Shown: positions 31,432-61,256 of the stretch, one piece after another
Layout: each line of letters begins with the position of its first letter
Numbering within the stretch: the stretch's first letter is position 1
IMG/VR virus record: IMGVR_UViG_3300031669_000001
Coordinates: 281,070-345,069 of that record
Direction: 5' to 3' (one strand)
DNA: 64,000 nucleotides
The notes under the pieces: model-generated
Told to the model about the DNA's origin: nothing
Databases searched by the model: none
What the model saw: the letters and a program-made list of their open reading frames with translations, nothing else
Position numbers and translations under genes: made by a program

Positions 31432-31565
31432 TGGTTGTGAAGGTAGGGATCCAACCTACATCTACTGACCCATGGAATCAGCGCTTTTAAGATCTGTATC
31501 TCGGCTACATCGTAACGGATTTTTACCGTTACTCTCTTTTTGTCGGTCACTTTAAGCTACTTCAC
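31432..31565 (-). ncRNA. tRNA-like RNA with ~60-nt D-loop expansion
   Basis: GTGAAG/CTTCAC acceptor, GCTT/AAGC D-stem, CTGAT-TCCATGG-GTCAG arm, GTAGG-TTGGATC-CCTAC T-arm, ACCA end. Confidence 0.65.
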
Positions 31566-31595
31566 TGGTGCGCTCGGGGAGACTCGAACTCCCAC
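31566..31595 (-). pseudogene. Orphan 3' half of a tRNA-Leu
   Basis: GTGGGAGTTCGAGTCTCCCCGAGCGCACCA, resembling the 3' end of the tRNA at 32122-32206. Confidence 0.7.
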
Positions 31596-31606
31596 ATACT
31601 TCTCCG

Positions 31607-32122
31607 TTAACGCGTTGATCCAATCTCCTCGAGAAGTTCTTGTAACGTGATAGATGATTTACTACTCTTCGAGGCATTTGCCTTGTGTGGAATAAACTCA
31701 CAGTTTGCAGGATGAGAGATAATCCTCGGATCTATTTGATTCTTGAATCCAAAATCTATTGATAGTCTGTGATCTCTAACGACTCCGCTAGGATTCGTCT
31801 TCCTTGAATACATTCCATACTTTACTAATAGATCATAACCTTTGATAGTTTCGATTATGCCTGCCAAATTGAAAGTGCATTGCTCTTGATAGATCATCTT
31901 TTTCAATTTTGCTTCGTCGGTAACTTTGCGTTTACCGAGTTTTGTTTCTGACATACTTTGAATTCTGGGGTGACTTTCTTTCGTGAGACCTTTTGACCAA
32001 GTAGTTTTCCCTTTATTTGGAGAAGGTATAGGTTGAAGCCCATTTCGATGAATCAGACACCACCGATAATGAGCGTTCAAAGATTGAGCATTTGGGAAGT
32101 CTCGTTCACATTTACATTTCAT
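31607..32122 (-). CDS. Zn-finger plus HNH-like putative homing endonuclease
   Basis: CKCERDF..QSLNAHYRWC; RDH...HPANC...N..K; its ATG overlaps the tRNA CCA. Confidence 0.7.
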   Translation of the reverse strand: MKCKCERDFPNAQSLNAHYRWCLIHRNGLQPIPSPNKGKTTWSKGLTKESHPRIQSMSETKLGKRKVTDEAKLKKMIYQEQCTFNLAGIIETIKGYDLLVKYGMYSRKTNPSGVVRDHRLSIDFGFKNQIDPRIISHPANCEFIPHKANASKSSKSSITLQELLEEIGSTR

Positions 32123-32206
32123 GGTGCGACTGGGGAGAGTCGAACTCCCATGCCTTTCGGCACACGGACCTCAACCGTGCGCGGCTACCAATTACGCCAC
32201 AGTCGC
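32122..32206 (-). tRNA. tRNA-Leu(GAG), long variable arm
   Basis: CACGG-TTGAGGT-CCGTG; ACCA end. Confidence 0.9.
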
Positions 32207-32208
32207 AT

Positions 32209-32508
32209 TTAGTCTTTTTTACGCCTTATAAACGTTAAGTTACTAAGCAAGATAGCTCTTTCATAATCATCTGGACCTCCAACAAGAATTGAAGTACTAG
32301 ACATTGGATCGACTTTTACTATAGCTTCATCACCATTTTTACCGTGATAGAGATATAAAACGTCACCTTCAATCTTTCCTCCAGAAGATGATTTTGGAAC
32401 TTTTATGAACGTTAATTCACCAACCTCCGGCAAAAATTCATCATCAGTTTGAACTCTATCATATATTTTCGCTTCTTCACCGCCAGCATAAGGACCAAAA
32501 TAATTCAT
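32209..32508 (-). CDS. Hypothetical protein
   Basis: 99-aa ORF with SD. Confidence 0.6.
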   Translation of the reverse strand: MNYFGPYAGGEEAKIYDRVQTDDEFLPEVGELTFIKVPKSSSGGKIEGDVLYLYHGKNGDEAIVKVDPMSSTSILVGGPDDYERAILLSNLTFIRRKKD

Positions 32509-32698
32509 TTATGATTTCCTTCTAATGTGTTACATTCCAGTAGATCCTAAATCCAGCAATTGATCTTCCAGCTACAAACACGATGGTCACATAAGGAGCT
32601 TGATCACGCAACTTACGATCTATCTGAATCGTCGGCAGTGACCAAGCCTCTGGAACGTAAGCGGTCTGTTTTGAAGTTATCTTTTGAAACTCTATCAT

Positions 32699-32911
32699 TT
32701 AGTACAACTTTGGAGGCAACAGATTCGTTGCAAGACGCTTTTGATGGCGCTTCACTGCAGATGCATGCTTGCGCTTGCGTTCTGTTGTTGGCTTCTCATA
32801 AGCTTCACGATCTCTAAGTTCATTCAGCAATCCTGTCTTCTCGACAGCTCGTTTGAACCTGCGCATTGCAGACTCAAACGATTCATGTTCTTTCACATAA
32901 ATTTTTGTCAT
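32699..32911 (-). CDS. rpsU: 30S ribosomal protein bS21
   Basis: [39 protein letters not shown]...LPPKLY. Confidence 0.95.
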
Positions 32912-33250
32912 TTATTCTCCAGTTACGCTTGGATAATCAGCATCGATCATGTCCAGATACGCTAGCGGGCTCATGCCTGGTTCCAAGATCTTGATGTTTG
33001 TGAATCCATTTTCTTCGGTGATCAGTGAATCTTTTTCGTCAATAGAACCACGAAACTTGCCATCACCTTTCTTATGCATGAGCTTTCCCTTTGGACCAGA
33101 GTCAGAGGGATCTACGGAACCCCATTGACGATGCGGATCGCCCATAGGTTCAACAAAGTATTTCTTGCCTGTACGAGGTGAATGATAGATGAAGCGACCC
33201 GTCTCATCAGTATGAGTGAGGAACTTTGTTACAATCTTGGGGTCAATCAT
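32912..33250 (-). CDS. Conserved phage hypothetical protein
   Basis: TDETGRF...RTGKKYFVEP...WGSVDP; the start may extend to 33337. Confidence 0.7.
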   Translation of the reverse strand: MIDPKIVTKFLTHTDETGRFIYHSPRTGKKYFVEPMGDPHRQWGSVDPSDSGPKGKLMHKKGDGKFRGSIDEKDSLITEENGFTNIKILEPGMSPLAYLDMIDADYPSVTGE

Positions 33251-33338
33251 TTTTCTTCTCCATATATCTTCTTCCAAGCAAGCTTCGCAGCGAGCGCGGT
33301 AAGGTACTCCATGTTTACAACTTCCAGTATCTTCCATA

Positions 33339-33464
33339 GGTGCAACGTGAGAGGACTCGAACCTCCATACTCTCCAAGTTCTTGGTTTCCCAAGGTAGTC
33401 GGATCGAACCGACGGTCTCCGGCACCGATTGGGCCGTGCCTACCCCATTGCAGGACCACGTTAC
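33339..33464 (-). ncRNA. tRNA-like RNA with two T-arms
   Basis: GTAACGTG/CACGTTGC-ACC outer stem; GTCGG-TTCGAT-CCGAC and GAGG-TTCGAGT-CCTC arms. Confidence 0.6.
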
Positions 33465-33583
33465 ATAGAATATACCATTAGAGCTGAAGCCAATCGGCAG
33501 ATACCTCTCTCTGTTTTCAGGTTCTTTCCACGGTCTATTCAAGAGCCAATCGAATTCGCGCTTATAGTAACCAATATATCTCC

Positions 33584-33673
33584 TGGCGGAAGATGGAGCA
33601 ATTGAAGCCCAACCTGTTTCCAGGTCGATCTGTTTTCGAGGCAGTCCCGGCACGCCTGTCCGGTTCATCTTCC
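33584..33673 (-). tRNA. tRNA-Ser(CGA), 8/4 fold
   Basis: GGAAGATG/CATCTTCC 8-bp acceptor, GGGC/GCTC 4-bp T-stem, loop CTCGAAA, long variable arm, GCCA. Confidence 0.8.
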
Positions 33674-34107
33674 GTGGCCAGAGGTGGTCATCCTCTGGAT
33701 GTTGCGATCTATGGGTTAGGTCTGACGAAACCTCTAAGACTCTTCTCGCGGCCCTAGTTACGTCCTGCCCCTAGCTTTGACGTTATCTTGGCATTTCCCC
33801 GGCGGGAACGGAACAACTACTGGATCTAATCCTTCACGAGTTATGCGAGTAGTACGCAATACCGTATATCGTTGCCGTGATCCACGACGGAGGTACAGTC
33901 ATCGGCTCCTCAGGTATGTCTTTGATGATGTTGCCAAGCTCGCTCTTGTACCGCCGTTCGGCCTTGAAAACGAAACCTATAGCTCAATCAAACAACACTA
34001 AGCATCCTGAACTACTACAACACTAGATTAAAGAGTGAATCTGCAGATTCGCTGCCCGACACAGTAACATCAGGGGCTGTACCGAGCAATCTTCAAACAT
34101 CATGTTA

Positions 34108-34143
34108 TGGTTGACTGCGAGGGATTCAACCTCTACGCAATCA
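34108..34143 (-). ncRNA. tRNA minihelix (acceptor stem and T-arm only)
   Basis: TGATTGC-GTA-GAGG-TTGAATC-CCTC-GCAGTCA-ACCA. Confidence 0.55.
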
Positions 34144-34146
34144 ATT

Positions 34147-34202
34147 GAGCAGCAAAATTAATGACCTTTGCTTTTATCACTGGGACGGTCAGGCAGGGAC
34201 TC
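34147..34202 (-). repeat. 56-nt element, copy A (candidate small RNA)
   Basis: 51 of 56 bases identical to 36745-36800. Confidence 0.8.
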
Positions 34203-34232
34203 AAATTCTTATTTAATCGAAGCAGCTTCGTC

Positions 34233-34508
34233 TTAGTAATGCTCGCGAGTTACGCTGTACTGCTTTTTTGCTTCTGGGTTAGGAACGCGTTCACCTTCAG
34301 GATTTTCTTCGGTTACATTGATAACCATCGTGAAGTATTCTTCTTCTTTTTGTTTCTTCAACGCATTTGCTTCTCCAACCGTCAAGCATTGTTTCGGACC
34401 GAAAACATATTTGCTACACTTTTTATCCATATCAATGGTTGGATTGCCGTTACGATCTTGTGGACCGTCAGGATGCAATTGCATTACTGATACATGGTAA
34501 GTTGCCAT
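34233..34508 (-). CDS. Hypothetical protein
   Basis: 91-aa ORF downstream of the early promoter at 34542-34570. Confidence 0.65.
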   Translation of the reverse strand: MATYHVSVMQLHPDGPQDRNGNPTIDMDKKCSKYVFGPKQCLTVGEANALKKQKEEEYFTMVINVTEENPEGERVPNPEAKKQYSVTREHY

Positions 34509-34576
34509 TGTTGTGTACTTTCATGTGTAGTTGAGATGATCATTATAACACAAAGAACAAAAAAGTACACATCATT

Positions 34577-34654
34577 TGGTGCGAGTGGAGGGATTCGAAC
34601 CCACACTGTACGACTTCTAAAGCCGTTGCCTCCTACCAATTGCGCTACACTCGC
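34577..34654 (-). tRNA. tRNA-Leu(TAG), short variable arm
   Basis: ACGGC-TTTAGAA-GTCGT; ACCA. Confidence 0.88.
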
Positions 34655-34744
34655 GGCAGAGAATACCAGAATCGAACTGGAAGCCCTCGCGGGCTCACAT
34701 CGCTTTCCAAGCGAGCCTTGTCGACCAGACAAGGATTATTCTCT
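34655..34744 (-). tRNA. tRNA-Ser(GGA), 8/4 fold
   Basis: AGAGAATA/TATTCTCT acceptor, CCAG/CTGG T-stem, 7-bp D-stem, loop TTGGAAA; ends G-CC abutting the next tRNA. Confidence 0.8.
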
Positions 34745-34766
34745 ATTTGTTGTTCCTTAGTAAGCA

Positions 34767-34852
34767 TGGTGGGTGTGAGAGGATTCGAACCTTTCAATGC
34801 TTGCGCGCCGGCATATTGGCCGGTGGGAATCACCATTTCCCCTAGACTACCC
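34767..34852 (-). ncRNA. tRNA-like RNA with 6-nt anticodon loop (anticodon undetermined)
   Basis: CCGGC-CAATAT-GCCGG; bulged acceptor; intact TTCGAAT loop and ACCA. Confidence 0.6.
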
Positions 34853-34853
34853 A

Positions 34854-34937
34854 TGGTGCCGCCGAAGGGATTCGAACCCTCAATGGCCGAAGCTCTCAAC
34901 CTCGTAACTGTGCCAGATTTGTATTAGCCACAGCGGC
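34854..34937 (-). tRNA. tRNA-Leu(GAG), short variable arm, enlarged D-loop
   Basis: CGAGG-TTGAGAG-CTTCG; ACCA. Confidence 0.8.
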
Positions 34938-34938
34938 A

Positions 34939-35562
34939 TTATTTGTTGCTTCTAATACTTTCCACCGTTCCCGGTGACATGTCTCTCATCTGAACTGCTA
35001 ACGCTTTCAACCTCTTGAAAGATGTTGGTAAGCAGTTGTCAGGAACATCTCCAGCCTGTTCAACGATCAGAGCAGCCATCTCACCAAATAGTAACACAGG
35101 CAGGTGAGTCTTACGCATCATGTCATCATGCTTCGCTCCGTCGATCAAAACTCCATTCGCGTGAGTTACGATCTCGTTGCTTATCATTCTGAACAGTTCA
35201 ATAACCTTCGAGCTGTCCCTCGTTGAATGTGTTACGATGCAGGTCCTACCTTCTTTTGGACTGTTAGGCCCAAACATAGGGTGAATTCCTGTAACGTGAT
35301 CACTGTGCGTTAAACAGATCTCGTTAGATCTCCGCTGAACTGAACAAACGTTGATTAGGTGCTTTCCAACGTGCCTTACTGCAACTTCATCAAATGCAGA
35401 GATCGGAACTGCTAGGATGATAAAATCGGCGTCATCTTCATCTACGATCTTGGCGTGTGATTCCAATTCCCTCTTCAAGAATGAACCAAACACTCCCATA
35501 CCAACTATGGCGATCTTCATCTCTGTTGGTGGTGCAGCCGAAAATGGACCTGTATCGTTCAT
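34939..35562 (-). CDS. tyrA: Prephenate dehydrogenase-like protein
   Basis: KIAIVGMGVFG, IILAVP, NVCSVQ, GIHPMFGP, HDDMM; SD GAGGTG before 35562. Confidence 0.82.
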   Translation of the reverse strand: MNDTGPFSAAPPTEMKIAIVGMGVFGSFLKRELESHAKIVDEDDADFIILAVPISAFDEVAVRHVGKHLINVCSVQRRSNEICLTHSDHVTGIHPMFGPNSPKEGRTCIVTHSTRDSSKVIELFRMISNEIVTHANGVLIDGAKHDDMMRKTHLPVLLFGEMAALIVEQAGDVPDNCLPTSFKRLKALAVQMRDMSPGTVESIRSNK

Positions 35563-35585
35563 GATGCACCTCTGGTTATAAAAAT

Positions 35586-35660
35586 TGGCGGGCCTGCAGG
35601 GAATCGAACCCCGCTGTTCGGTTTTGGAGACCGACATAATAGCCGATATATGACAAGCCC
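35586..35660 (-). tRNA. tRNA-Trp(CCA)
   Basis: TCGGT-CTCCAAA-ACCGA; GCCA. Confidence 0.85.
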
Positions 35661-35774
35661 GGTCCGAGGAGCGGGGTTCGAACCCGCATGCCATAGGCGG
35701 GAGATTTTGAGAAACATTCACGTTAGTAAATGTTTGAAAAAGTCTCCTGAGTATACCAGTTTCTCCACCCTCGG
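35661..35774 (-). tRNA. tRNA-Leu(CAA) with ~31-nt insertion/intron in the anticodon loop
   Basis: GGAGA-CT[TTTTCAAACATTTACTAACGTGAATGTTTCT]CAAAA-TCTCC; otherwise a canonical class II body. Confidence 0.75.
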
Positions 35775-35800
35775 ATCAACGTTTCTTTTGGTGCGATATT

Positions 35801-36523
35801 TCAAATTCCAATAGCAAATTTCAAATCTTCACAATCTATCAATCTAATCTTTCCAGAAATAAATTTGGAATAATTTCCAATATTCTTTTCATCTCTAATC
35901 AAATAAATTTTGATATCTGGATGATCTTTAAAAACTTTTTGATATTTTACAATATCTCTTTGTGATAACCAACCTTTGACTTCAATAAAAACATTTTCAA
36001 AAATAGAGAAATCTGGCGTATAAATTTTATGATCCCCATATTTGATTCTTGGCCGAGATATCGAATAACCTAATTCTAAAAGTTTTAATCCTACATTGTA
36101 CTCCCATGTTCCTTGAACTTTAATTCCACCAACTTCAAACCATTTAATATGCGGAGAAGTTTCTAGATATTTAATTCTAGCTTCTGAGATTTTTCTTTTT
36201 GCATCTTCAGAAAGATTAAATCTTCTTCCTAGATTACCTTTACTTATTTTTCTTCTTGTCTCTTCGTGATTTGAAACAATTTCTTCTAATTTCTTTCCCT
36301 TAAATTTGCTAAGTTTGCCTTTGAATCCTGATGGTTCTGGGATTTTGCCATCTCTATGAATTAAACACCATCTATAATGAGAATTTAACGATTGAGAATT
36401 TAAGAATTCCCGTCCACAATCACATTTTAATTCAAACAATAAATTATGAACAATCCTACGATGTTTATTCAAATTTCCATTTGATGAAAATTTTTTATTG
36501 CAATCTTTACATTTTAGATCCAT
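35801..36523 (-). CDS. Zn-finger plus PD-(D/E)xK putative homing endonuclease
   Basis: C2H2 fingers, NUMOD3-like segment, YTPDF..IEVKGW; AT-rich; TATAAATA at 36529-36536. Confidence 0.8.
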   Translation of the reverse strand: MDLKCKDCNKKFSSNGNLNKHRRIVHNLLFELKCDCGREFLNSQSLNSHYRWCLIHRDGKIPEPSGFKGKLSKFKGKKLEEIVSNHEETRRKISKGNLGRRFNLSEDAKRKISEARIKYLETSPHIKWFEVGGIKVQGTWEYNVGLKLLELGYSISRPRIKYGDHKIYTPDFSIFENVFIEVKGWLSQRDIVKYQKVFKDHPDIKIYLIRDEKNIGNYSKFISGKIRLIDCEDLKFAIGI

Positions 36524-36561
36524 AAATCTATTTATAGAAGACCATAGAGTATACCGAATTC

Positions 36562-36648
36562 TGGTGCGCGATGTCGGACTCGAACCGACACGCCCGTGAG
36601 GACCCCGACGTCTAAAGACGGGAAGACTACCAATTCCATCAATCGCGC
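36562..36648 (-). tRNA. tRNA-Leu(TAG), long variable arm
   Basis: Loop TTTAGAC; ACCA. Confidence 0.85.
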
Positions 36649-36655
36649 TTACTTC

Positions 36656-36739
36656 TGGTACCCTCGACCGGATTCGAACCGGTAAAAACTCTAGATTTTA
36701 AATCTAGCGGCTGTGCCAATTTACCTAAGTCACGAGGGC
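36656..36739 (-). tRNA. tRNA-Leu(TAA), short variable arm, enlarged D-loop
   Basis: CTAGA-TTTAAAA-TCTAG; ACCA. Confidence 0.82.
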
Positions 36740-36744
36740 ACATA

Positions 36745-36800
36745 GAGCAGCAATATTTACGACCTTTGCTTTTATCACTGGGACGGTCAAGCAGAGACTC
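36745..36800 (-). repeat. 56-nt element, copy B (candidate small RNA)
   Basis: Fills the gap between tRNA-Trp and tRNA-Leu; matches 34147-34202. Confidence 0.8.
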
Positions 36801-36804
36801 TATT

Positions 36805-36878
36805 TGGCAGGCTGTGAAGGAATCGAACCCTCGTCCGGAGTTTTGGAGGCTCCGTCATTACCACTATGTTAACAACCC
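36805..36878 (-). tRNA. tRNA-Trp(CCA)
   Basis: Loop CTCCAAA; GCCA. Confidence 0.85.
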
Positions 36879-36969
36879 GGCGGAAGATGGCGGATTCGAA
36901 CCCCCTAACCCTTTAACAGGATCAAACAGTTTTCAAGACTGTGCTGCTCTCCGAGACAGTAGATCTTCC
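36879..36969 (-). tRNA. tRNA-Ser(TGA)
   Basis: ACAGT-CTTGAAA-ACTGT, long variable arm; ends G-CC. Confidence 0.85.
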
Positions 36970-37056
36970 GGCGGAAGGTCAGGGAATCGAACCCTCAACC
37001 CTTCCGGGTTGGCGACGGCTTTCAAAACCGTTTGTGTACCATACACGCTACAATCC
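36970..37056 (-). tRNA. tRNA-Ser(TGA) with two acceptor-stem mismatches
   Basis: ACGGT-TTTGAAA-GCCGT; acceptor GGATTGT/ACCTTCC. Confidence 0.7.
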
Positions 37057-37155: not shown

Positions 37156-37159
37156 ATAT

Positions 37160-37249: not shown

Positions 37250-37254
37250 ATGTT

Positions 37255-50663: not shown

Positions 50664-52214
50664 TTAACTCGCGTTGAACAGCTTTGTTGCGATGCTGTCA
50701 CCTTCACGAGTGAAGCGAACGAACTGGAAGATCCTTTCAGACCAGCCAGACAGCTGAGTCCAACCACTCCACTCTGAAATCGGCGTGGTGTTACCCGAGT
50801 TCAGGTTGACTGCAACCTTGACGCAATCAGACGAGAAGATATTCTGACCACGAGAGCTCAGACGGTTTACTTCCATGTCAGACAGGATGACGACGGTGTC
50901 TGGCTCGAAGCCGAGGCCTGACTTCATGTCGAAGGCAGACTGCAGGTTTGTACCACCACCTGCGTTGCGCGCCATGATCTTTTCATACAGCGTAAAGATC
51001 GAGTCAGAGCTGTTCAAGTCTACGTGTTGAGCGTAGTTATCGAACATCGTGAACTTTGCTTCGAAAGCGTCCTTGGAAGCCTTCATCAGCGCGGCGCTGA
51101 AGATTGCACCGACCTTGATCGGAGAGTTGTTGTTGCTGCTAATGTCGTTACGACCGTACTGGTAACCAATACCACCCATGGAACCCGAAGAATCCAGGAT
51201 GATCCAGACGCGCTTGCCGAGTTCTGGGATGTTCTTGATCGAGAGCTCTGTTGCCTCAGTGATCGCATTCAGAACGACAGTTGGAACACCGCTAGCCTTC
51301 GCAACATCGTGTGCGTTGATGAAGCCGAACGGCAGCTGCTTGGACTTCGAAACACCGACTGGATCCTTGATGCGGTTAGCAACGGTAACCCAAGTCTCGT
51401 CAGAGATTCCAGCTTCCTTCATGTTACGAAGGTTACGGATCAGAGCCATGTAGCCCATCGAACCAGATCCAACGCGGTTGATCAGCTCAGTCCACAGCGC
51501 AGCCTTTGACTTCTGCTCTTCCTTAGGCAGCTGACCATTCTTGGACAGCTCAACTTCCCAAGTGTAAGGCGACTCGAGAGTCTCTGCCATGATCTTGTTG
51601 AAGAGCTCAGCGTGAACTTCATCAGCTGGCTTTGGGTGAACGATGCGAAGCAGATCACGGAAGCGCAGGCCTTCGGAACGGTTGTACTTACCTAGCTGGT
51701 ACGCGTCAAACTTGTTGAACGCGAGAGCGACACCCTTCTTGATCGCCAGAGGAATCTTGGTCTTGGAACCAAAGGTCGTCAGCGAGTAAGCGTACATGTC
51801 TGTAAGTTCGTCAGCGCGCTGGATCAGGTAACCGATGGCTTCCTTGAAGTTTTCCAGAACGAGGTTCTTGTCGCGCAGGATCTTTGCGAGTTCAACAACC
51901 ATAACGATTGGCATCGTACGGATGAACATCTCTTCACGGGCGAAGCGCGCAACGTTCAGCGCGTAGCGTGCACCCTTCAATCCATGTGTCGAAACGACTT
52001 GGTCGAGAGCTGTGACCATGCGCTTGACCTTCGCGTTAGCGGACTCGTAATACGAATCATTGCCATAAAGCGTGCTAACTAACGTCTCGAACAGAATCTG
52101 CTCAGGCCCTTTTACAGCCTGCAGGTTGCCATTTTTGGACAACGCTTTGCCGAATGGCGCTACAGGAGTAGCTGCAGTTGGTGAGAGGGTCTTCTTAACG
52201 TTTAGCTTTGACAT
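50664..52214 (-). CDS. TROVE/Ro60 (Rsr-like) RNA-binding protein with vWA domain
   Basis: FDAYQLGKY, LRIVHPKP, TWEVELS, MGYMALIRNLRN, ILDSSGSM, GGTN, ILSDME. Confidence 0.9.
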   Translation of the reverse strand: MSKLNVKKTLSPTAATPVAPFGKALSKNGNLQAVKGPEQILFETLVSTLYGNDSYYESANAKVKRMVTALDQVVSTHGLKGARYALNVARFAREEMFIRTMPIVMVVELAKILRDKNLVLENFKEAIGYLIQRADELTDMYAYSLTTFGSKTKIPLAIKKGVALAFNKFDAYQLGKYNRSEGLRFRDLLRIVHPKPADEVHAELFNKIMAETLESPYTWEVELSKNGQLPKEEQKSKAALWTELINRVGSGSMGYMALIRNLRNMKEAGISDETWVTVANRIKDPVGVSKSKQLPFGFINAHDVAKASGVPTVVLNAITEATELSIKNIPELGKRVWIILDSSGSMGGIGYQYGRNDISSNNNSPIKVGAIFSAALMKASKDAFEAKFTMFDNYAQHVDLNSSDSIFTLYEKIMARNAGGGTNLQSAFDMKSGLGFEPDTVVILSDMEVNRLSSRGQNIFSSDCVKVAVNLNSGNTTPISEWSGWTQLSGWSERIFQFVRFTREGDSIATKLFNAS

Positions 52215-55583: not shown

Positions 55584-56108
55584 TCATGCTTTTCCTGCAG
55601 CGTCAACGTGAGCTTGAACGTCTTCAATCAGCTCTTTTAAATCAATCATAGCAGACTTCAGGTTGATTCCTTGTTGAGATGAGATGTCAACCCTGTTGCT
55701 TGAAGGATCTTGCGTCATTATGAAAGAATCAAACGACAGCTTTAGAACTTGAGAAAATTCTTCAAGTGGCAAGATGAACATCGCGTAATCTATCTTCGCT
55801 TCAGGAATCAATTGGTCTATGTGATCGCAAAGCTTTAGCGAATCCTTGCGAAGACGCTCCGTGATGTATGCTAACACCTTTGGGCTTCTAGAAAATTCTT
55901 CACAGAGAATCGCAGTCTTCAACATTTCACCATACAGCTCTACAACTTCCTTGCGAATGCATCTAGCGATGACGAAGCTTCTCAAAGAAACACCGGGGTT
56001 CTGATAGATTGCATCTCTTCCTGAGAGATTTTCCATCATAGCGTAAAAGTGATCTGGAAGCCTAGCCATTGCTAGGAGGTAGTTTACGTTAAAAGTTTTT
56101 GAGATCAC
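55584..56108 (-). CDS. Hypothetical protein
   Basis: 174-aa ORF. Confidence 0.65.
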   Translation of the reverse strand: MISKTFNVNYLLAMARLPDHFYAMMENLSGRDAIYQNPGVSLRSFVIARCIRKEVVELYGEMLKTAILCEEFSRSPKVLAYITERLRKDSLKLCDHIDQLIPEAKIDYAMFILPLEEFSQVLKLSFDSFIMTQDPSSNRVDISSQQGINLKSAMIDLKELIEDVQAHVDAAGKA

Positions 56109-56489
56109 TAGTCATCCTCGTCATCATCGCTAAAGCTAAAGCCTGCAGCTTCCAGATCAAAGTCATCTGGAAATGTAAGCGTTTCAGCGGAGCCTTCATT
56201 TTGGTAGTATTCCTCTTGTTCGAGAAGTTCTTCTACTGTCTTCTCGTTCCTATACCATCGAACGTGCGCGGAACCATCTCCACCATCGCAAATCAAACCA
56301 TAAATTTTCATTTCATCACTCCAATTAGCATAAGTACTAAACCAGTTACAAATTCTAATATGCCTAACAGCGCCCAGTATGCGTAACTATTATCACCATG
56401 TGGGAATGGAGTGTACAACGTCCTATAAACAAAGTGCGTTGACTGTGCTGAAAGAATAAAACAACCAATTGCTAGGAAAATGAAGAGGT

Positions 56490-58907
56490 TCATTTCTTCG
56501 CAACTTCATTTCCAGTAACGAAACCCATTCCATTACGCTCAAGACCGATCAGCTTCGCTTTTGATTCCATGTCAAGACGATCCAACCAGGTTTCAACATC
56601 CAACTGTTCATCGAGCAGATTAGCTTGACGACGAACAGTTGCAAAGTCACCAGGAGTCAAGTGTTTAATGGTTGCAAGTTCGATCTTCAGATCTTCCTTT
56701 TCAGCCTCAGTGAAAGCTTCGTAGTCACACTTCGATTCATTGATGAACATCGACAAACGTTGTTCATTGGTCAGCGCTTTGAATTCCAGCTTGAACGTGA
56801 ATCGACGAAGTGCAGCTGCATCTAGAGAAGTCATCAGGTTAGTGGCGCAGATGAACAGACCTTGGAAACGTTCCATGCGTTGCAACAGCTCATTGACCTG
56901 AGTAACTTCCCAGCTCTTCGAAGCCATCGAACGATCACGAAGGAAGCTGTCAGCTTCGTCGAGAAGTAGGATGGCGCCTTCAGATTTTGCTTCATCAAAC
57001 ATTGCCGCGATGTTCTTTTCTGTTTCACCGAGGTACATGTTGAGCAGCGCAGAAGCAGGCTTGATCAAGAGAGGCTTGTCCAACTCCATCGCGATGAACT
57101 CTGCAAGTTGGGTCTTACCCGTACCAGGAGCACCGTAAAGACACAAGGTGCCAGTTGTCTTGCGCTTCAATGCTTGGATAATCTTGTCGATAGGCATGCC
57201 GCCGGCAAGGTTCAGGTAATCGAGGCTGTACTTCGTGACGCTGTCACGAAGCTCTTCCATCTTATCACGATCTAGCGCCCGTTGGCTATTTGCTATCAAG
57301 TGAAATAAGCTTTCTTCTCCATGCTCACCTTCACGCTTTAACATTTGAACAGTGCGCGCTGCAGACTTTACCTGCTCTACGTTGATCTCAATGTACTTTG
57401 AAAGTTTAATGGCAACGTCATTGTTGAAGCCGAGAGTATCAACTACACCCTTAACTTCTTCGCGACGATCTGCACGTGAGCCGCCTTTCAGTTCAACGTG
57501 GAACAAGAACTTACCGACATTTTCTGTCGTGATGGAACTTGGTGACGTAACTAACCAGATAGTTGGAACTGGGTTGCGAATCAAGAGCAGCTCATCGCTG
57601 TCCAAATCTTCATCTTTTGTCCCAGTCAGCCCATCATCTCCAAACATGTCCAGCATCCAAGATGGACGATGGCGGCTTTTTGTTAAAGCTTGCTCTGTCT
57701 TTTCAACGATCAGGATGATTGGATCACCCATATCATCTGAAAGCTTCTTGACATGTTGTTGGGCGACGTAACAAATGCTTGGTATGTCAGTAGATCGTGC
57801 ATCACGAGTCCTAACTACCATGCTTTTCAATTTCATCTTCTCAAGAAGGTTTACAACGTAGTTCGTTTTGTCTATCTTGGATGAACCGTAGATCATCACG
57901 TTTAAACCATGTTGATCTTCTACCTTGATACCCTCTTCAGGATTCGCTTTAGCTCTTCCTGAAATTTGAGCTACGTCGTAGGCGCGTTCCAAGAATTCTT
58001 GGAGAAGTTCTTCATCTTTCACGTTTGCTTTTGCGATTGAACCAGAGAACGTCTTCTTGTTGCTGTGCTTGAATTCGTCAACGAAGCGCGCAAAGAATTT
58101 TGCATCTGTATCTGTGTAGTTTGAGATCGCGTATACCCAAAACTCAGACATGTTTGACATGCGCTTGCTCTTTGCGTCATAATTGACGATACCGAGAGCG
58201 ATCGGAGCACTGCGCTCTGACAAAGCTTCATCGATACCTAAGATAGTGATGTCATTTTCTCCAAGCATCACCTTGTAAAAATGCTCAAATAGCGTAGGAT
58301 TCTTGGTGATAGTGAACAAGAAGTCACGGAAGATCGTTGCACGAATGTCAGTGGAGAACATCAAGTTCAGCTCGAGCAACTTGCACTCAGCCTCTGTCAA
58401 TCCAATGGTATCAGACAGTCGTTCGAGGTTGAGAGTGATGGACGAAATTCTGTTCGAGTAGGATTCTTCCATCGCGCTGTACATCTCGTTCGCGATTTTA
58501 TCCAGAGCCGCGCAGGATTCATGTGAGGATTTATAGCTCATTGTGAGCTCACGGTAGATCGCAGATGAGATGAAGAAGTCTTTGACGTACGTAGTGGTGA
58601 TATTTTCGCTGAATTGAGTGCGAAGATTGTTGACGATTTGCATCAACTTTTCTTGCTTCTCCAGAGAGCTGAGAGCATTCTCAGGATTGAATTCATCAGT
58701 GTCGATGTCAGGCAGAATCTTCTTGATGATAGGCGTCAACCTATCGTTACCAAAGTCACGAGGCATACCTTGTAACAGAGATGTGAAATACGTCGAGAAG
58801 ACGTACTCATCCATCAAGATGAATGGAGCGCAGACTTTATCTCCAGCGAGATTGATCAAGTAACGGAGGAGTTGAACTGGGTATTCATGTTTTTGCTCGA
58901 GACTCAT
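56490..58907 (-). CDS. AAA+ ATPase (degenerate first and intact second AAA module)
   Basis: YGAPGTGKT, LLDEADSFL, ATN, LDAAALRRF. Confidence 0.9.
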   Translation of the reverse strand: MSLEQKHEYPVQLLRYLINLAGDKVCAPFILMDEYVFSTYFTSLLQGMPRDFGNDRLTPIIKKILPDIDTDEFNPENALSSLEKQEKLMQIVNNLRTQFSENITTTYVKDFFISSAIYRELTMSYKSSHESCAALDKIANEMYSAMEESYSNRISSITLNLERLSDTIGLTEAECKLLELNLMFSTDIRATIFRDFLFTITKNPTLFEHFYKVMLGENDITILGIDEALSERSAPIALGIVNYDAKSKRMSNMSEFWVYAISNYTDTDAKFFARFVDEFKHSNKKTFSGSIAKANVKDEELLQEFLERAYDVAQISGRAKANPEEGIKVEDQHGLNVMIYGSSKIDKTNYVVNLLEKMKLKSMVVRTRDARSTDIPSICYVAQQHVKKLSDDMGDPIILIVEKTEQALTKSRHRPSWMLDMFGDDGLTGTKDEDLDSDELLLIRNPVPTIWLVTSPSSITTENVGKFLFHVELKGGSRADRREEVKGVVDTLGFNNDVAIKLSKYIEINVEQVKSAARTVQMLKREGEHGEESLFHLIANSQRALDRDKMEELRDSVTKYSLDYLNLAGGMPIDKIIQALKRKTTGTLCLYGAPGTGKTQLAEFIAMELDKPLLIKPASALLNMYLGETEKNIAAMFDEAKSEGAILLLDEADSFLRDRSMASKSWEVTQVNELLQRMERFQGLFICATNLMTSLDAAALRRFTFKLEFKALTNEQRLSMFINESKCDYEAFTEAEKEDLKIELATIKHLTPGDFATVRRQANLLDEQLDVETWLDRLDMESKAKLIGLERNGMGFVTGNEVAKK

Positions 58908-59353
58908 TTTATGCCTTTATGATTATTGAGAGGAATTTTACAGCGCACTTTCTACTTCATGTTCCTTTACTGTGATCCAGGTAACGCTTGGATCAACTTC
59001 TACGATATAAACTGGAATGTCATCGTCAGTTCCCAGACATTTGATGATACCTATCTCACCAGATTGAAGACGAACCTTGTTATTGATGTTGAATCGGTGA
59101 CGATAATGTTCACGAAGCCACTTCTGATTTTCATTCATGCGTGTTCTCCAGATAATTTATAAAACGTAACCTTCATTAAATCCAAGATCAAGCTTCTTAG
59201 CGTTGTAGATAGCTGCATCTAAGATTTGAGATACAGTAAAAGCGGTGTAAGCTCTTGCAATTTCATCATTACTATTACCACCACATTGAGCAAATACTAC
59301 AGAAGTCCAATCTTCAATGAACTTCTTCCGCATTGCAACTTTTTCAGCTCTAG

Positions 59354-59854
59354 TCATGTTTTGTAACCCTTACGGATCTCTTCTATGATCTCGATAGCGT
59401 CCCAAACGTCACCGTTGAAGAGGATCGCTAGACCACCTTTGTCAGCCCACATCGCGCAATTTTCTGGGTGATCATCGATCAAAACCTTGTTAGGACCCGA
59501 GTGAAGTTGCTTGTCTTTACGAGGAAGAACGATGGTCTCATATTCTGGACCGAATTTCTTAGCTACCCACTCACGCTTTTGATTGCGAGAACGTTCACCA
59601 GGAGGTGCGCCAGTCAGGAACTTTGGGTTAAATTGCTTCGTGTATTCCCAGAGGTGTTCAGCGTTAGGCATGAACTCTAGCTTGGCGAAGAAGTCTCTGT
59701 CAGCCATGATGAACTTCCACATACCTTTGTCAAACTGGTGTGGGTAGCGTCCAGAAATATCGTAGACTCTTTTGTTGAAGTCAGCGAATACACCGTCTAG
59801 GTCCAGGTAAAACTGTTCGAATGGATTGAAATCTATTTTTGGTATTTTTTTCAT
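59354..59854 (-). CDS. HAD-family 5'(3')-nucleotidase-like protein
   Basis: YLDLDGVFADF, K..W, LIDD. Confidence 0.85.
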   Translation of the reverse strand: MKKIPKIDFNPFEQFYLDLDGVFADFNKRVYDISGRYPHQFDKGMWKFIMADRDFFAKLEFMPNAEHLWEYTKQFNPKFLTGAPPGERSRNQKREWVAKKFGPEYETIVLPRKDKQLHSGPNKVLIDDHPENCAMWADKGGLAILFNGDVWDAIEIIEEIRKGYKT

Positions 59855-59895
59855 AGGGCATTATAACAAATCATAAGGATAAAGTACACATCAAC

Positions 59896-60141
59896 TTATT
59901 TGCTTTTCTTGACAGAAACGTAAGTGCCGCTAGTGTGCTTGATTAACTTGAAAGCATTTTTTTAATGCTCGTGCAAACTCGTCTGCCAGTTCTTCTGAAG
60001 TAAAGCATTCTAGTTCATCTTGTGTATCTGAACTAAATGCGCCATGCCTAGATTCCCATCGAACTTCCCAAAGTTGAACAGCGTCAACCGTTTTTTTTTG
60101 TTTGTGAATGGAACCAGTAGCGACTTAAAGTTGAGATTCAT
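59896..60141 (-). pseudogene. Small gene broken by two homopolymer frameshifts
   Basis: A9 and A7 runs; correcting both gives one continuous ORF ending ...LKNAFKLIKHTSGTYVSVKKSK. Confidence 0.5.
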
Positions 60142-60552
60142 TTTATTCCTCGTCTTGTTGATAATTCGGCTTTCAAACCTTTGTAAGCTTTCGTTTCACT
60201 GTAATCGTACGCATCAGCTGCTTCCAACATCTCAATGCAATTTTCAATGTGCAATGTGGACATGTCCTTCATCTTGATGATCATCATGTCAAACGTTAAC
60301 CATTCGTCATCATTGTTCAATCGATGATCTTTCCAAACATTTACATCGAACATCTAATTCTCCGATTTCATCGCAGCAACTAAGCTATCGAAATACTTGT
60401 CATCTTCATCTTCACCAGACACTACTAGCACGTCGAACAATTGACTGATGGCGAAGGAATATCCTTGAGACCAAGTAAGTCGATCCTTTTCTGAGACGCC
60501 TACAACTTCTGGAGGTTGAGTTATTCCACCAAAGAGTTGCTGGAATTGTTCT

Positions 60553-60906
60553 TCAGTTAACTTCATATTCGTAAGGTGCTCGATCTTCCCTTGGGCCTTT
60601 GTGATGGCTTAGAGCGTATTCATCGAAGTAAACAACCGTCCAATCTGGAAGATCTTGTTTTATCATCTTTGCAATCTCGAGACCACGCTCAGAAAAAGCT
60701 TTGATGTCGAAAGCTGGAGTTTTCCTTTCGATGAATGGAAGGTAGTCATCATTTAGTTCATATTCATGGCACCAATCTTTTAGTGCCTTGACAGTTTTTG
60801 GAGATAGCTTGTAACTTTCAACGCAAGCATTTACACCATCCTCATCCCACAGCCCAGTGGAACAATAATCTGCCATCACCCGAACATACTTGATAACCAT
60901 TCCCAT
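60553..60906 (-). CDS. Hypothetical protein
   Basis: 117-aa ORF with SD. Confidence 0.7.
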   Translation of the reverse strand: MGMVIKYVRVMADYCSTGLWDEDGVNACVESYKLSPKTVKALKDWCHEYELNDDYLPFIERKTPAFDIKAFSERGLEIAKMIKQDLPDWTVVYFDEYALSHHKGPREDRAPYEYEVN

Positions 60907-61057
60907 GCTATCTCCTTAAACAAAGACCCAATTTACAGAATATCTTCTTTTGCCGCATCGAGTGCAAGTATGTGTACGCTCCACGTCATTTCCGCGGAAG
61001 CATCTGATCTCCACGAGATAGTCGTGACATCCAAAAAGGCATTTGATATTTTTCATA

Positions 61058-61256
61058 GGCGCGTCTGGGCTGGATTCGAACCAACCTACCTCCGACTTAT
61101 TAGGCCGGTGCTCTACTCTACAGTAAGGATCTTGATGTTAGACAGCGTGGCCAACGCTGTGGCTGATCAAAATCTTTTTGTCAGAGTCACATCACATCGT
61201 AAGGTGGAGCTCGAGATACCTTAGTCTGCTTGTGAATACCAATGAGCTACAAACGC
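61058..61256 (-). ncRNA. 199-nt tRNA-like RNA with ~120-nt D-loop expansion, anticodon position AAT
   Basis: GCGTTTG/CAGACGC, GCTC/GAGC, CCGGC-CTAATAA-GTCGG, GGTTGG-TTCGAAT-CCAGCC. Confidence 0.75.

What the first reader, a model, noticed from the sequence alone, without database searches (positions are those of the whole stretch)
31432..61256. Family of tRNA-scaffold RNAs carrying large structured D-loop inserts
Seen: two loci 30 kb apart (31432-31565 and 61058-61256) keep acceptor, D, anticodon and T stems but have ~60-nt and ~120-nt hairpin-rich inserts in the D-loop. The inserts share GTGAC(T)C(T)GACAAAAAGA, TTACGATGT and AGATC(C)TTA. The anticodon loops are odd (TCCATGG; CTAATAA, giving AAT, which is rare in bacteria). 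Inference: a ncRNA class using a tRNA chassis to display a cargo domain, such as a nuclease decoy or protein ligand, or a new type of D-loop intron.
Basis: partly seen in the sequence, partly recalled or inferred. Interest (0 to 1): 0.8.

Follow-up and report, generated by a model that had tools for sequence, protein, structure and literature searches.

The report
Phage tRNA-shaped RNAs with D-loop modules
A giant soil phage and a few relatives encode an RNA that is a complete tRNA frame with a conserved 125-base two-hairpin module at one exact spot of the D-loop; no curated family matches it, it sits among RNA-repair genes, and whether the module is kept or spliced out is untested.

Summary
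Both loci lie on the minus strand and are complete tRNA cloverleaves interrupted in the D-loop. L1 (31432-31566) carries 67 nt and L2 (61058-61256) carries 124 nt. ARAGORN and Rfam miss both, but ARAGORN calls them tRNAs once the insert is cut out in silico.

L2 is a real structured RNA family. I found five distinct members in three diverged lineages of uncultivated jumbo phages, always between a tRNA-ligase-type 2H phosphoesterase gene and an NT5C/AAA/helicase/TROVE(Ro60) block. Of 54 modelled pairs, 34 show compensatory changes, including the helices inside the insert.

The insert always sits between G19 and A21. It has two hairpin domains, with an invariant GGCC loop and a loop palindrome that changes but stays palindromic.

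L1 is a shorter, degenerate paralogue. It shares significant but non-collinear motifs with L2 and is deleted in the closest relative.

My best reading is a tRNA-derived ncRNA that keeps the module (about 0.45). The main rival is a new kind of tRNA intron. That rival is strengthened by hairpin inserts in the anticodon loops of other tRNA genes in this phage clade. Expression and splicing could not be tested.

The parts
61058..61256 (-). L2: tRNA-frame RNA with a D-loop module, the window's member of a five-member family
   Evidence: Sequence. The MFE fold is a cloverleaf plus two hairpins. A covariance model built only from relatives L110/L121 finds it full-length at 77.1 bits, E=4e-21. Covariation.
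61115..61238 (-). L2 insert (124 nt) between G19 and A21 of the D-loop
   Evidence: In the alignment of five members the 5' D-loop A-N-N-G-G and the A before the GAGC strand are kept in all, and the insert always lies between them.
61188..61234 (-). Domain A: a three-tier hairpin (CACA/TGTG, GCA/TGT, TAAGGT/ACCTTA). Its 12-nt loop holds the palindromes CTCGAG (61210-61215) and GAGCTC (61207-61212).
   Evidence: Independent MFE folds of L2, L110 and L121 give the same architecture. Helix 4 has 5 of 6 pairs with double changes. The loop palindrome is CUCGAG, CUUAAG or UCUAGA in the different lineages.
61115..61187 (-). Domain B: a long interrupted hairpin with the apical stem ACAGCG/CGCTGT and the loop TTGGCCA (61148-61154). 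It includes the motif GTGACTCTGACAAAAAGA (61173-61190).
   Evidence: Helix 5 has 12 of 15 pairs and helix 6 has 4 of 5 pairs with double changes. GGCC in the apical loop is invariant in all five members.
61068..61086 (-). T arm with a 6-bp stem (GGTTGG/CCAGCC) and the loop TTCGAAT. Acceptor plus T stack is 13 bp, not 12.
   Evidence: The sixth pair (G-C) is present in all five members, and the other T-stem pairs covary.
61092..61108 (-). Anticodon arm CCGGC-CTAATAA-GTCGG (anticodon AAU)
   Evidence: Homologues carry UCU instead, with a covarying stem.
31432..31566 (-). L1: a degenerate paralogue with a tRNA frame (CAT anticodon, T loop TTGGATC, encoded ACCA) and a 67-nt D-loop insert
   Evidence: The L2-type model aligns its frame only, at 19.5 bits. 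No homologue was found. It is deleted in L148/L149.
31487..31553 (-). L1 insert: GTGACCGACAAAAAGA, hairpin GTAACGG/CCGTTAC, GATGT, AGATCTTA
   Evidence: On the + strand the hairpin plus TCTCTTTTTG scores as terminator-like.
61498..61935 (-). Upstream neighbour: a 145-aa 2H phosphoesterase of the tRNA-ligase CPD type, with two HxT motifs (HHVTIEF, YHVTLS)
   Evidence: Motifs are invariant in six homologues. Nearest atlas clusters carry PF08302 tRNA_lig_CPD, 2H-SAK and Acb1, with TM 0.65-0.75. Pfam itself gave no hit. My own AF2 model was poor, pLDDT 53.
50664..52214 (-). TROVE/Ro60-like gene, 8.8 kb from L2 on the same strand. No canonical YrlA RNA was detected in the window.
   Evidence: Pfam TROVE 2.7e-25. 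Rfam YrlA is absent at E<=10 in the whole window, but the same model hits beside the Ro gene of Brevundimonas phage Marchewka.

Best explanation
L2 is the window's member of a small family of phage-encoded, tRNA-derived non-coding RNAs.

Shown:
- A full tRNA frame carries a 120-125-nt two-hairpin module inserted exactly at the variable pocket of the D-loop, between G19 and A21.
- The frame has a 7-bp acceptor, D stem, G18G19, A21, anticodon arm, T loop, discriminator G, and CCA or CC.
- The whole fold, module included, is maintained by compensatory substitutions.

Inferred:
- The RNA is cut out of a polycistronic transcript by the host tRNA end-processing enzymes. No minus-strand promoter-like site was found next to it, and it abuts ORFs on both sides.
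- The module stays in the mature RNA, projecting from the tRNA elbow.
- Its two conserved loops (invariant GGCC, and a 6-nt palindrome) make RNA-RNA kissing contacts (homodimers) or bind a protein.
- The RNA works within the surrounding RNA-repair and translation-conflict gene block (2H/CPD, NT5C/HAD, AAA, helicase, TROVE/Ro60), possibly as the tRNA-like partner of the phage Ro60.

L1 is a shortened, decaying paralogue at the end of the tRNA cluster and is probably dispensable.
For: Family and structure:
- A model built from relatives alone retrieves L2 at 77 bits, against 29.5 bits or less for ordinary tRNAs.
- Five distinct members were found.
- 93.5% of cells are paired, and 34 of 54 pairs have double changes. 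No shuffle out of 500 reaches this, and slid controls give 4-9. Every insert helix covaries.

The insert site is the one D-loop position that tolerates extra residues, and G18G19 and A21 are kept around it in all five members. That fits an L-shape maintained with the module in place.

Loops are conserved while stems change:
- GGCC is invariant in the domain B loop.
- The domain A loop palindrome changes by symmetric double substitutions (CUCGAG, CUUAAG, UCUAGA). The chance of a 6-nt palindrome is 0.09-0.21 per loop.

Non-tRNA features:
- The acceptor/T stack is 13 bp in all members.
- L137 has A33 instead of U33.
- Anticodon identity is not conserved (AAU vs UCU).

Negative searches: no group I, ribozyme or other Rfam family hit at E<=5-10.

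Context: synteny between the 2H/CPD and NT5C genes holds in all lineages that have the RNA. TROVE is within 9 kb in the two long contigs, and no YrlA was detected. PMC7824862 notes that jumbo-phage TROVE proteins are expected to work with a tRNA-like partner.

Precedent: T4 species 1 RNA (rnaC) is a stable tRNA-cluster RNA with a T arm, an anticodon-like arm and a long hairpin where the D arm should be.
Against: - There is no expression or end-mapping data. RNA contigs of the only listed run cover the upstream ORFs but not L2.
- Two of the three lineages keep fully canonical anticodon loops (CU-AAU-AA, UU-UCU-AA), as expected of working tRNAs. The L110-type frame resembles a genuine phage tRNA-Arg(UCU).
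- Other tRNA genes of the same phage clade carry 22-31-nt hairpin inserts in the anticodon loop, and an uninterrupted allele of one of them exists in this window. This suggests the clade can remove inserts.
- The neighbouring CPD-type 2H enzyme is a tRNA-splicing/repair healing enzyme.
- The RNA is absent from several relatives that keep the same gene block, so it is accessory.
- Sequence conservation is inconsistent: RNA 94% vs gene 61% in one pair, but RNA 77% vs gene 87% in another.
- Only five sequences are available, and the alignment was fitted to the model.
- The Ro60 link rests on proximity alone.
Confidence: 0.45

Rival explanations
1. The loci are genuine tRNA genes (Arg-UCU or Ile-AAU for L2-type, Met/Ile-CAU for L1) interrupted by a new kind of intron at D-loop position 20. 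An unidentified endonuclease would remove it. The ends would then be healed and sealed by phage enzymes: the adjacent CPD-type 2H phosphoesterase, a kinase and an RNA ligase. The conserved intron structure would be the splicing signal, or the excised RNA would have a function of its own.
For: - After excision the frames are called as tRNAs.
- Anticodon loops are canonical in four of five L2-type members.
- The L110-type frame resembles a phage tRNA-Arg(UCU), with the same TTTCTAA loop and G73-CCA.
- The same clade has 22-31-nt hairpin inserts inside the anticodon loops of Leu and Trp tRNA genes. The window's own tRNA-Leu(GAG) is the uninterrupted allele of a gene interrupted in L148 and L150.
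- The gene directly upstream of L2 is of the fungal tRNA-ligase CPD type.
- An RNA ligase gene lies in the L137 neighbourhood.
Against: - No protein-spliced tRNA intron turned up for bacteria or phages in the held literature. D-loop introns appeared only for archaea and a red alga.
- By inspection there is no bulge-helix-bulge at the junctions.
- No group I or self-cleaving ribozyme hit was found.
- No splicing endonuclease was found among the window ORFs scanned.
- The 13-bp acceptor/T stack, A34 in the AAU versions and A33 in L137 are poor features for an elongator tRNA.
- Conserved loop sequences and loop palindromes are not what a mere spacer needs.
- The insert sits at the only structurally tolerant D-loop position in every member.
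Confidence: 0.3
2. The RNA is specifically the Y-RNA equivalent of the phage Ro60/TROVE protein. This is a sub-case of the best explanation. The D-loop module would carry the Ro-binding helix and the tRNA frame would be the effector-binding domain. That is the same two-module logic as YrlA, wired through the D-loop instead of the anticodon stem.
For: - TROVE lies on the same strand 8.8 kb away, and the synteny is conserved in L110.
- No YrlA was found in the window, although the Rfam model finds one beside the Ro gene of another jumbo phage.
- Domain B is a long helix with an A-rich internal loop, loosely like a Y-RNA stem.
- The literature expects a tRNA-like partner.
Against: - YrlA genes lie within 4 kb of rsr, whereas this RNA is 8.8 kb away.
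- The GNCGAAN0-1G motif is not present. The nearest strings, UACGAUG and UACGUUAG, are not conserved in L121, L135 or L137.
- Only 64 kb of a 345-kb genome was searched for YrlA.
- Co-occurrence with TROVE could not be tested on the short contigs.
Confidence: 0.15
3. The loci are decaying tRNA genes that picked up selfish or accidental DNA insertions, so the RNAs have no function of their own. For L1 in particular, the insert's hairpin plus T-run could be a leftover plus-strand terminator.
For: - L1 has no homologue, has a non-canonical T loop (TTGGATC) and anticodon loop, and is almost wholly deleted in the closest relative.
- Its hairpin followed by TCTCTTTTTG scores as a + strand terminator.
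- The tRNA cluster is full of odd tRNA-like genes and homing-endonuclease ORFs.
- L2-type RNAs are missing from several relatives.
Against: - For L2-type, compensatory changes occur in every helix across three lineages, loops are invariant and the insertion site is exact. None of this is expected of junk.
- The inserts have no target-site duplication or terminal inverted repeats.
- No + strand genes converge on L1.
Confidence: 0.1

Closest known systems
Bacteriophage T4 species 1 RNA (rnaC), a small stable RNA of the T4 tRNA cluster
   Same: It is phage-encoded and sits in or at the end of a tRNA gene cluster beside homing-endonuclease genes. It has a canonical T arm (GGGTTCGAATCCC) and an anticodon-arm-like hairpin. 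It has about 60 extra structured nucleotides in the D region, and its function is unknown (the stability and processing history is from my own knowledge of the T4 literature).
   Different: T4 rnaC has no D stem, G18G19 or A21. A long hairpin replaces the D arm rather than being inserted at position 20. No sequence or model similarity was found: the L2 model gives no hit in the T4 tRNA region. L2 lies in an RNA-repair gene block, not in the tRNA cluster.
YrlA (Rfam RF02553), bacterial and phage Y RNA with a tRNA-like domain that partners Ro60
   Same: It combines a tRNA-like module (the D arm GUAGCUCA..GGUAGAGC and T arm are near-identical to consensus) with a long helical module. It is encoded in genomes with a TROVE/Ro60 gene, and it is found in phages.
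   Different: YrlA is circularly permuted: the T arm comes before the D arm, the acceptor is closed by a loop, the ends lie in the Ro-binding stem, and there is no free CCA as a rule. Here the order is that of a normal tRNA with free acceptor ends, an intact anticodon arm and the extra module in the D-loop. There is no Rfam hit at E<=10, and the RNA is 8.8 kb from rsr rather than within 4 kb.
Non-canonical tRNA introns of archaea and Cyanidioschyzon merolae, including D-loop or D-arm positions
   Same: An insertion in the D region of an otherwise complete tRNA gene. The frame is recognisable only after excision.
   Different: Those introns are short, are defined by a bulge-helix-bulge motif, and are cut by EndA/TSEN. 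Here no BHB is evident, the host domain is bacterial or phage, the insert is 124 nt with conserved loops, and no endonuclease was found.
Bacterial group I introns in tRNA genes (e.g. tRNA-Leu UAA)
   Same: Interruption of a bacterial or phage tRNA gene by structured RNA. The 22-nt inserts of the clade's tRNA-Leu sit at 34/35, the same site as the cyanobacterial Leu intron (the site is from my own knowledge).
   Different: Group I introns are over 200 nt with a conserved catalytic core and lie in the anticodon loop. No Intron_gpI hit was found, and inserts of 124, 67 and 22-31 nt are far too small.
ROOL / GOLLD large ornate phage RNAs
   Same: They are phage or prophage ncRNAs often found beside tRNA genes, and they multimerise through loop contacts (my own knowledge). 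This resembles the palindromic-loop dimer idea proposed here.
   Different: They are 500-800 nt, have no tRNA frame, and are Rfam families that did not hit. Multimerisation of L2 is only inferred.

Membership tests
tRNA (Rfam RF00005 / ARAGORN) | Scores at or above the family threshold as a contiguous cloverleaf | tested here: not met
   L2 gives only a 16.9-bit partial hit against a gathering score of 29, and L1 gives none. ARAGORN finds nothing, even with the intron option. Both are called only after the insert is removed in silico.
tRNA (Rfam RF00005 / ARAGORN) | Four arms with conserved tertiary residues (U8, A14, G18G19, A21, T-loop TTCRA) | tested here: met
   All are present in the five L2-type members around the insert. 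L1 lacks G18G19 and has the T loop TTGGATC.
tRNA (Rfam RF00005 / ARAGORN) | 12-bp acceptor/T stack and a 7-nt anticodon loop with U33 | tested here: not met
   The stack is 13 bp (7+6) in all five. U33 is present in four, L137 has A33, and L1 has C33.
tRNA (Rfam RF00005 / ARAGORN) | Aminoacylation and decoding | not testable with these tools
YrlA / bacterial Y RNA (RF02553) | Match to the covariance model | tested here: not met
   No hit at E<=10 anywhere in the window. The same model gives 32.6 bits beside the Ro gene of phage Marchewka, so it can detect phage YrlA.
YrlA / bacterial Y RNA (RF02553) | Permuted order (T arm, closed acceptor stem, D arm) with the ends in the Ro-binding stem | tested here: not met
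   L2 has normal tRNA order and open acceptor ends.
YrlA / bacterial Y RNA (RF02553) | Encoded within about 4 kb of rsr on the same strand | tested here: not met
   Same strand, but 8.8 kb away (61058 vs 52214). The criterion is from PMC4201824.
YrlA / bacterial Y RNA (RF02553) | Binds Ro60 | not testable with these tools
   Needs pull-down or EMSA.
Group I intron | Catalytic core (P3-P9) recognised by Rfam Intron_gpI, size over ~200 nt | tested here: not met
   No hit at E<=5-10. The inserts are 124 and 67 nt.
BHB (archaeal/eukaryal-type) tRNA intron | Bulge-helix-bulge at the two junctions | tested here: inconclusive
   By inspection of the folds, 9 unpaired nt lie on the 5' side and 1 nt on the 3' side, with no 3-4-3 motif. 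No dedicated BHB search tool was available.
BHB (archaeal/eukaryal-type) tRNA intron | EndA/TSEN-type endonuclease encoded or available | tested here: inconclusive
   None was found among about 58 window ORFs scanned with Pfam or PHROGs. The other 281 kb of the genome was not seen.
Small self-cleaving ribozymes (hammerhead, twister, pistol, hatchet, HDV-like) | Match to any Rfam ribozyme model in or beside the insert | tested here: not met
   None at E<=5 over 60500-61800 and 31000-39000.
T4 rnaC-like stable RNA | Sequence or structure homology to T4 species 1 RNA | tested here: not met
   No hit of the L2 model in the T4 tRNA region. The only shared string is a 7-mer, at chance level. The resemblance is architectural.

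The most novel reading that the evidence does not exclude
These RNAs define a new class of phage ribonucleoprotein scaffold. An intact tRNA body is recognised and matured by the host tRNA machinery. From its elbow it carries a self-associating two-hairpin module, whose palindromic CUYRAG and GGCC loops dimerise the RNA. The RNA recruits the phage Ro60 and RNA-repair enzymes to damaged tRNAs. It would therefore be a Y-RNA-like adaptor that arose independently of YrlA by insertion into D-loop position 20.

Equally unexcluded is the first protein- or self-spliced D-loop tRNA intron in the bacterial or phage world. That would be part of a clade-wide system that also splices hairpin introns from anticodon loops.
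Probability: 0.2. Interest if true: 0.85.

Novelty: new variant of a known kind. Interest (0 to 1): 0.7.

Why it matters
tRNA-like non-coding RNAs (tmRNA, YrlA, T4 species 1 RNA) are few, and each has taught something about how cells and phages reuse the tRNA fold.

This family shows a third topology: a complete tRNA with free ends and a large conserved module grafted at the D-loop variable pocket. It sits inside a jumbo-phage gene block for RNA repair and translation conflict.

If the module is retained, this is a natural 'tRNA scaffold' RNA, a possible missing partner for phage Ro60 proteins, and a candidate self-associating RNA.

If the module is spliced out, it would be the first D-loop tRNA intron outside archaea and eukaryotes. 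Together with the anticodon-loop hairpin inserts found in the same clade, it would point to an undescribed phage tRNA-splicing pathway that uses Trl1-type healing enzymes.

Either outcome can be tested directly with a Northern blot or junction RT-PCR.

Tried and rejected
1. Exact-motif scan of IMG/VR with GTGACN{1,4}GACAAAAAGA gave over 108 loci. All were chance except the source contig.
2. T-arm and D-arm/insert-start patterns, and a structure-spaced pattern (TAGCTCA..GG / GGCC / AGAGC / TTCRAWT), found only the source contig and two contigs of one relative in IMG/VR. In 185,579 species genomes they found only tandem-tRNA chance hits.
3. The L1 T-arm pattern gave chance hits in coding DNA. 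BLAST of L1 against phage GenBank found nothing.
4. RNA evidence: one metatranscriptome run holds 33% of the words of 60500-62000, but its contigs stop at 61286. None was listed for L1. This is uninformative.
5. Pairing of the domain B loop UGGC with the RNA's own 3' GCCA (T-box-like) is complementary in only 2 of 5 members beyond the GGC/GCC core, so covariation does not support it.
6. The Ro-binding motif GNCGAAN0-1G has only loose look-alikes, and they are not conserved.
7. An A20 (ArgRS identity) correlation with the UCU anticodon was dropped after the five-member alignment showed that base belongs to the variable start of the insert.
8. 'Strong purifying selection on the insert' was inferred from L110 vs L121 (94% RNA vs ~61-70% gene). 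It was withdrawn as a general claim because win vs L135 shows the reverse (77% vs 87%). Lateral exchange of the RNA gene is the likelier reading of the first pair.
9. A third copy at 23635-23732 (+), suggested by two motif matches, is a coding region.
10. The AF2 model of the 2H protein was too poor (pLDDT 53) for a fold search, and the PDB profile search was empty.
11. The MAFFT/RNAalifold alignment of the inserts was structurally wrong and was replaced by a model-guided alignment.

Full report
**What the window is.** The window is the last 64 kb of a 345,069-bp viral contig from a soil metagenome (IMGVR_UViG_3300031669_000001 = Ga0307375_10000004). Its genes mark a jumbo phage:
- rIIA, NAMPT plus NMNAT-Nudix, thymidylate synthase, and a collagen-repeat protein.
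- Homing endonucleases, PTH2, and YqeY.
- A permuted tmRNA that scores best against the betaproteobacterial model.
- A dense tRNA cluster.

The nearest deposited TROVE proteins are about 30% identical. They come from Caulobacter, Brevundimonas and Xanthomonas phages.

**The observation.** Both loci are on the minus strand.

L2 (61256->61058) reads as follows:
- Acceptor GCGTTTG, then TA.
- GCTC-ATTGG, a 124-nt insert, then A-GAGC.
- Anticodon arm CCGGC-CTAATAA-GTCGG, variable region AGGTA.
- T arm GGTTGG-TTCGAAT-CCAGCC, acceptor strand CAGACGC, then G-CC.

Unconstrained folding gives this cloverleaf with the insert as two hairpins (z = -2.74).

L1 (31566->31432) has these parts:
- Acceptor AGTGAAG/CTTCACA and D stem GCTT/AAGC around 67 nt.
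- Anticodon loop TCCATGG and T arm GTAGG-TTGGATC-CCTAC.
- An encoded ACCA.

The L1 MFE is not a clean cloverleaf. ARAGORN and Rfam call neither locus. With the insert removed in silico, ARAGORN at a 90% threshold calls Ile(aat) and Met(cat).

The shared motifs are real. There is an exact 10-mer and an exact 9-mer, and two matches of 9 or more occur in 0.02% of dinucleotide shuffles. They are not collinear.

**L2 has homologues, and the fold covaries.** The syntenic position in a related contig (L110 = L113) holds a 202-nt RNA. It has the same frame, a different acceptor stem and anticodon arm (TCT), and a diverged insert.

Protein-guided searches with the upstream gene gave three more members:
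- L121.
- L135/L136, from the homologue search and the look-ups.
- L137 = L120 = L138, from the same route.

A covariance model built only from L110 and L121 retrieves window L2 full-length at 77.1 bits (E = 4e-21). Ordinary tRNAs reach at most 29.5 bits because they lack the insert.

On the five-member, model-guided alignment, 93.5% of cells pair. Of 54 pairs, 34 show changes on both sides. No shuffle out of 500 reaches this, and controls with the partner slid by 1-3 columns give 4-9. The four helices inside the insert contribute 24 of those pairs.

Two caveats apply. The five sequences come from three lineages, and the alignment was fitted to the model. However, independent MFE folds of three members give the same architecture.

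No other Rfam family matches any member. One copy gives a marginal tRNA hit over its last 72 nt.

**Anatomy of the family.** Five features are common to all members.
- The insert lies exactly between G19 and A21. A14-N-N-G18-G19 and A21 are kept in all five. This is the D-loop variable pocket (positions 20, 20a, 20b). From general tRNA structural knowledge, it is the only D-loop site where extra residues are tolerated.
- Domain A is a tiered hairpin. Its loop always contains a 6-nt palindrome that differs between lineages by symmetric double changes: CUCGAG in the window, CUUAAG in L135, L110 and L121, and UCUAGA in L137. The chance of a palindrome is 0.09-0.21 per loop.
- Domain B is a long interrupted hairpin. 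Its apical loop is U(U/A)GGCC(A/G), with GGCC invariant, while the closing stem covaries in 4 of 5 pairs.
- The T stem has six pairs, giving a 13-bp acceptor/T stack in every member.
- The discriminator is G, followed by CCA or CC.

The anticodon is AAU in the window and L135, and UCU in L110, L121 and L137. L137 has A33.

**Context.** The RNA always lies between a 130-145-aa protein and an NT5C/HAD gene. These are followed by an ~800-aa AAA ATPase and a DEAD_2 helicase. In the two long contigs, TROVE/Ro60 lies 8-9 kb away.

The small protein has two invariant HxT motifs. Its nearest atlas clusters carry PF08302 (fungal tRNA-ligase cyclic phosphodiesterase), 2H-SAK and Acb1. I therefore read it as a 2H phosphoesterase that acts on 2',3'-cyclic phosphate ends.

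L2 abuts ORFs on both sides, and no minus-strand sigma-70-like site is nearby. It is probably cut from a polycistronic transcript.

Several relatives keep the gene block but lack the RNA. Rfam's YrlA model is silent across the window at E<=10. It does detect a YrlA beside the Ro gene of Brevundimonas phage Marchewka.

**L1.** The L2-type model aligns only the L1 frame, at 19.5 bits. That frame shares GTAGCT, AGCGCT and the 13-mer AGATGTAGGTTGG with L2-type RNAs, the last one in a different structural register.

No homologue was found. In the closest relative (L148/L149; the flanking protein is 89% identical) only the first 15 nt, GTGAAGTAGCTTAAA, remain. They are fused to the next gene's upstream region.

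I conclude that L1 is a shortened, probably decaying paralogue. Its motif sharing with L2 is specific to this lineage.

**A second phenomenon that bears on the interpretation.** Other tRNA genes of this clade carry hairpin inserts in the anticodon loop:
- Window 35661-35774 (31 nt).
- L130:3120-3221 (28 nt).
- The tRNA-Leu(GAG) of L148, L149 and L150 (22 nt, between nt 34 and 35).

The window's own tRNA-Leu(GAG) at 32122-32206 is uninterrupted. In the window that gene is followed by an HNH ORF and then by a duplicated tRNA 3' half of the other allele type, which looks like a homing-endonuclease cassette.

Interrupted tRNA genes are therefore common in this clade. That raises the prior for some removal pathway. 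The held literature turned up protein-spliced D-loop introns only in archaea and a red alga.

**Weighing the readings.**

Points for a retained module:
- The insertion site is exact and structurally tolerant.
- The loops are invariant or palindromic, which a spacer does not need.
- The acceptor/T stack is 13 bp.
- Non-decoder features are present (A34, A33).
- No splicing signal or ribozyme match was found.
- T4 species 1 RNA is a precedent.

Points for an intron:
- Most members have canonical anticodon loops.
- The L110-type frame resembles a real phage tRNA-Arg(UCU).
- The clade has anticodon-loop inserts.
- The adjacent healing enzyme is of the Trl1 CPD type.

Conservation rates cut both ways. 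The only RNA data were uninformative.

| Reading | Probability |
|---|---|
| Retained-module ncRNA (Ro60 partnership is a sub-case, about 0.15) | about 0.45 |
| Intron | about 0.30 |
| Non-functional relic (much higher for L1 alone) | about 0.10 |

That L2-type RNAs are a genuine structured RNA family I hold at about 0.9.

**Comparison and novelty.** The family works like other tRNA-mimic ncRNAs. It fails the tested membership criteria of tRNA (contiguous model score, 12-bp stack), YrlA (model, topology, distance to rsr), group I introns and the ribozyme families. It has only an architectural likeness to T4 rnaC.

I class it as a new variant of a known kind: a tRNA-derived ncRNA. So far it is confined to one group of uncultivated jumbo phages.

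Noticed in passing
window 35661-35774 (-); L130:3120-3221 (-); L148:599-705; L149:2964-3070; L150:~1849-1955: Other tRNA genes of this phage clade carry 22-31-nt hairpin inserts inside the anticodon loop: Leu-CAA-like, Trp-CCA and Leu-GAG. The 22-nt insert of tRNA-Leu(GAG) sits between nt 34 and 35 in the relatives, while the window's orthologue (32122-32206) is uninterrupted. These could be mini-introns or anticodon-masking hairpins. No BHB is evident.
   Followed up: partly
window 31566-32206 (-): A 171-aa HNH-type ORF (31607-32122) starts on the CCA of tRNA-Leu(GAG). It ends inside a duplicated tRNA 3' half (31566-31606) whose acceptor strand CGAGCGC matches the allele seen in L150, not the window's own tRNA. 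This looks like a homing-endonuclease cassette that brought its own tRNA copy.
   Followed up: partly
L148:690-760 and L149:3055-3125 versus window 31420-31570: In the closest relative, L1 is reduced to its first 15 nt (GTGAAGTAGCTTAAA), joined directly to the upstream region of the next gene. This is a clean ~125-nt deletion.
   Followed up: yes
window 32100-38360 (-): The tRNA cluster is dominated by Leu, Ser, Tyr and Trp genes. It contains several tRNA-like genes that ARAGORN misses (for example 38266-38356, 38093-38181, 37165-37248, 34657-34745, 36655-36740, 33337-33465). Some are directly abutting, and nearly all have an encoded CCA. The relative L130 has the same odd set plus further irregular tRNA-like genes (L130:1635-1790).
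   Followed up: partly
window 25486-25868 (-): The phage encodes a permuted (two-piece) tmRNA with the tag ANDANGALALAA, scoring best against the betaproteobacterial model. PTH2 (29750-30142) and a YqeY-like gene (28063-28512) lie nearby. A relative (L137) encodes SmpB, an RNA ligase and a metallophosphatase, and relatives L148-L151 encode ribosomal protein S21.
   Followed up: no
window 47400-61935 (-): A gene block typical of RNA-repair and conflict systems: cpYpsA SLOG (48171-48857), TROVE/Ro60 (50664-52214), DEAD_2 helicase (53734-55482), 805-aa AAA ATPase (56490-58907), NT5C/HAD (59354-59854) and tRNA-ligase-CPD-like 2H phosphoesterase (61498-61935). No YrlA-type Y RNA was detected.
   Followed up: partly
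L110:1184-1381 versus L121:781-978: The RNA gene is 94% identical between two phages whose adjacent 2H gene is only 61-70% identical at the DNA level, and the identity block ends at the RNA's ends. The window and L135 show the opposite (RNA 77%, gene 87%). This suggests lateral exchange of the RNA gene as a cassette.
   Followed up: partly
window 31512-31544 (+): On the + strand, the L1 hairpin GTAACGG-ATTTTTA-CCGTTAC followed by TCTCTTTTTG scores as an intrinsic terminator. The shared motif GACAAAAAGA is this T-run read from the other strand. No + strand gene converges on it.
   Followed up: no
window 62008-62688 (+); 35801-36523 (-); 37255-37860 (-); 42278-42901 (-): Further free-standing homing-endonuclease-like ORFs: a NUMOD3 repeat protein, two Phage_endo_I-like proteins (one with an N-terminal C2H2 zinc finger) between tRNA genes, and an HNH protein.
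   Followed up: no
window 3625-8344 (-); 13998-18230 (+); 44186-46876 (-): An NAD salvage pair (NAMPT, NMNAT-Nudix), a 1410-aa collagen-repeat protein followed by a glycine-rich-domain protein, and an rIIA homologue.
   Followed up: no
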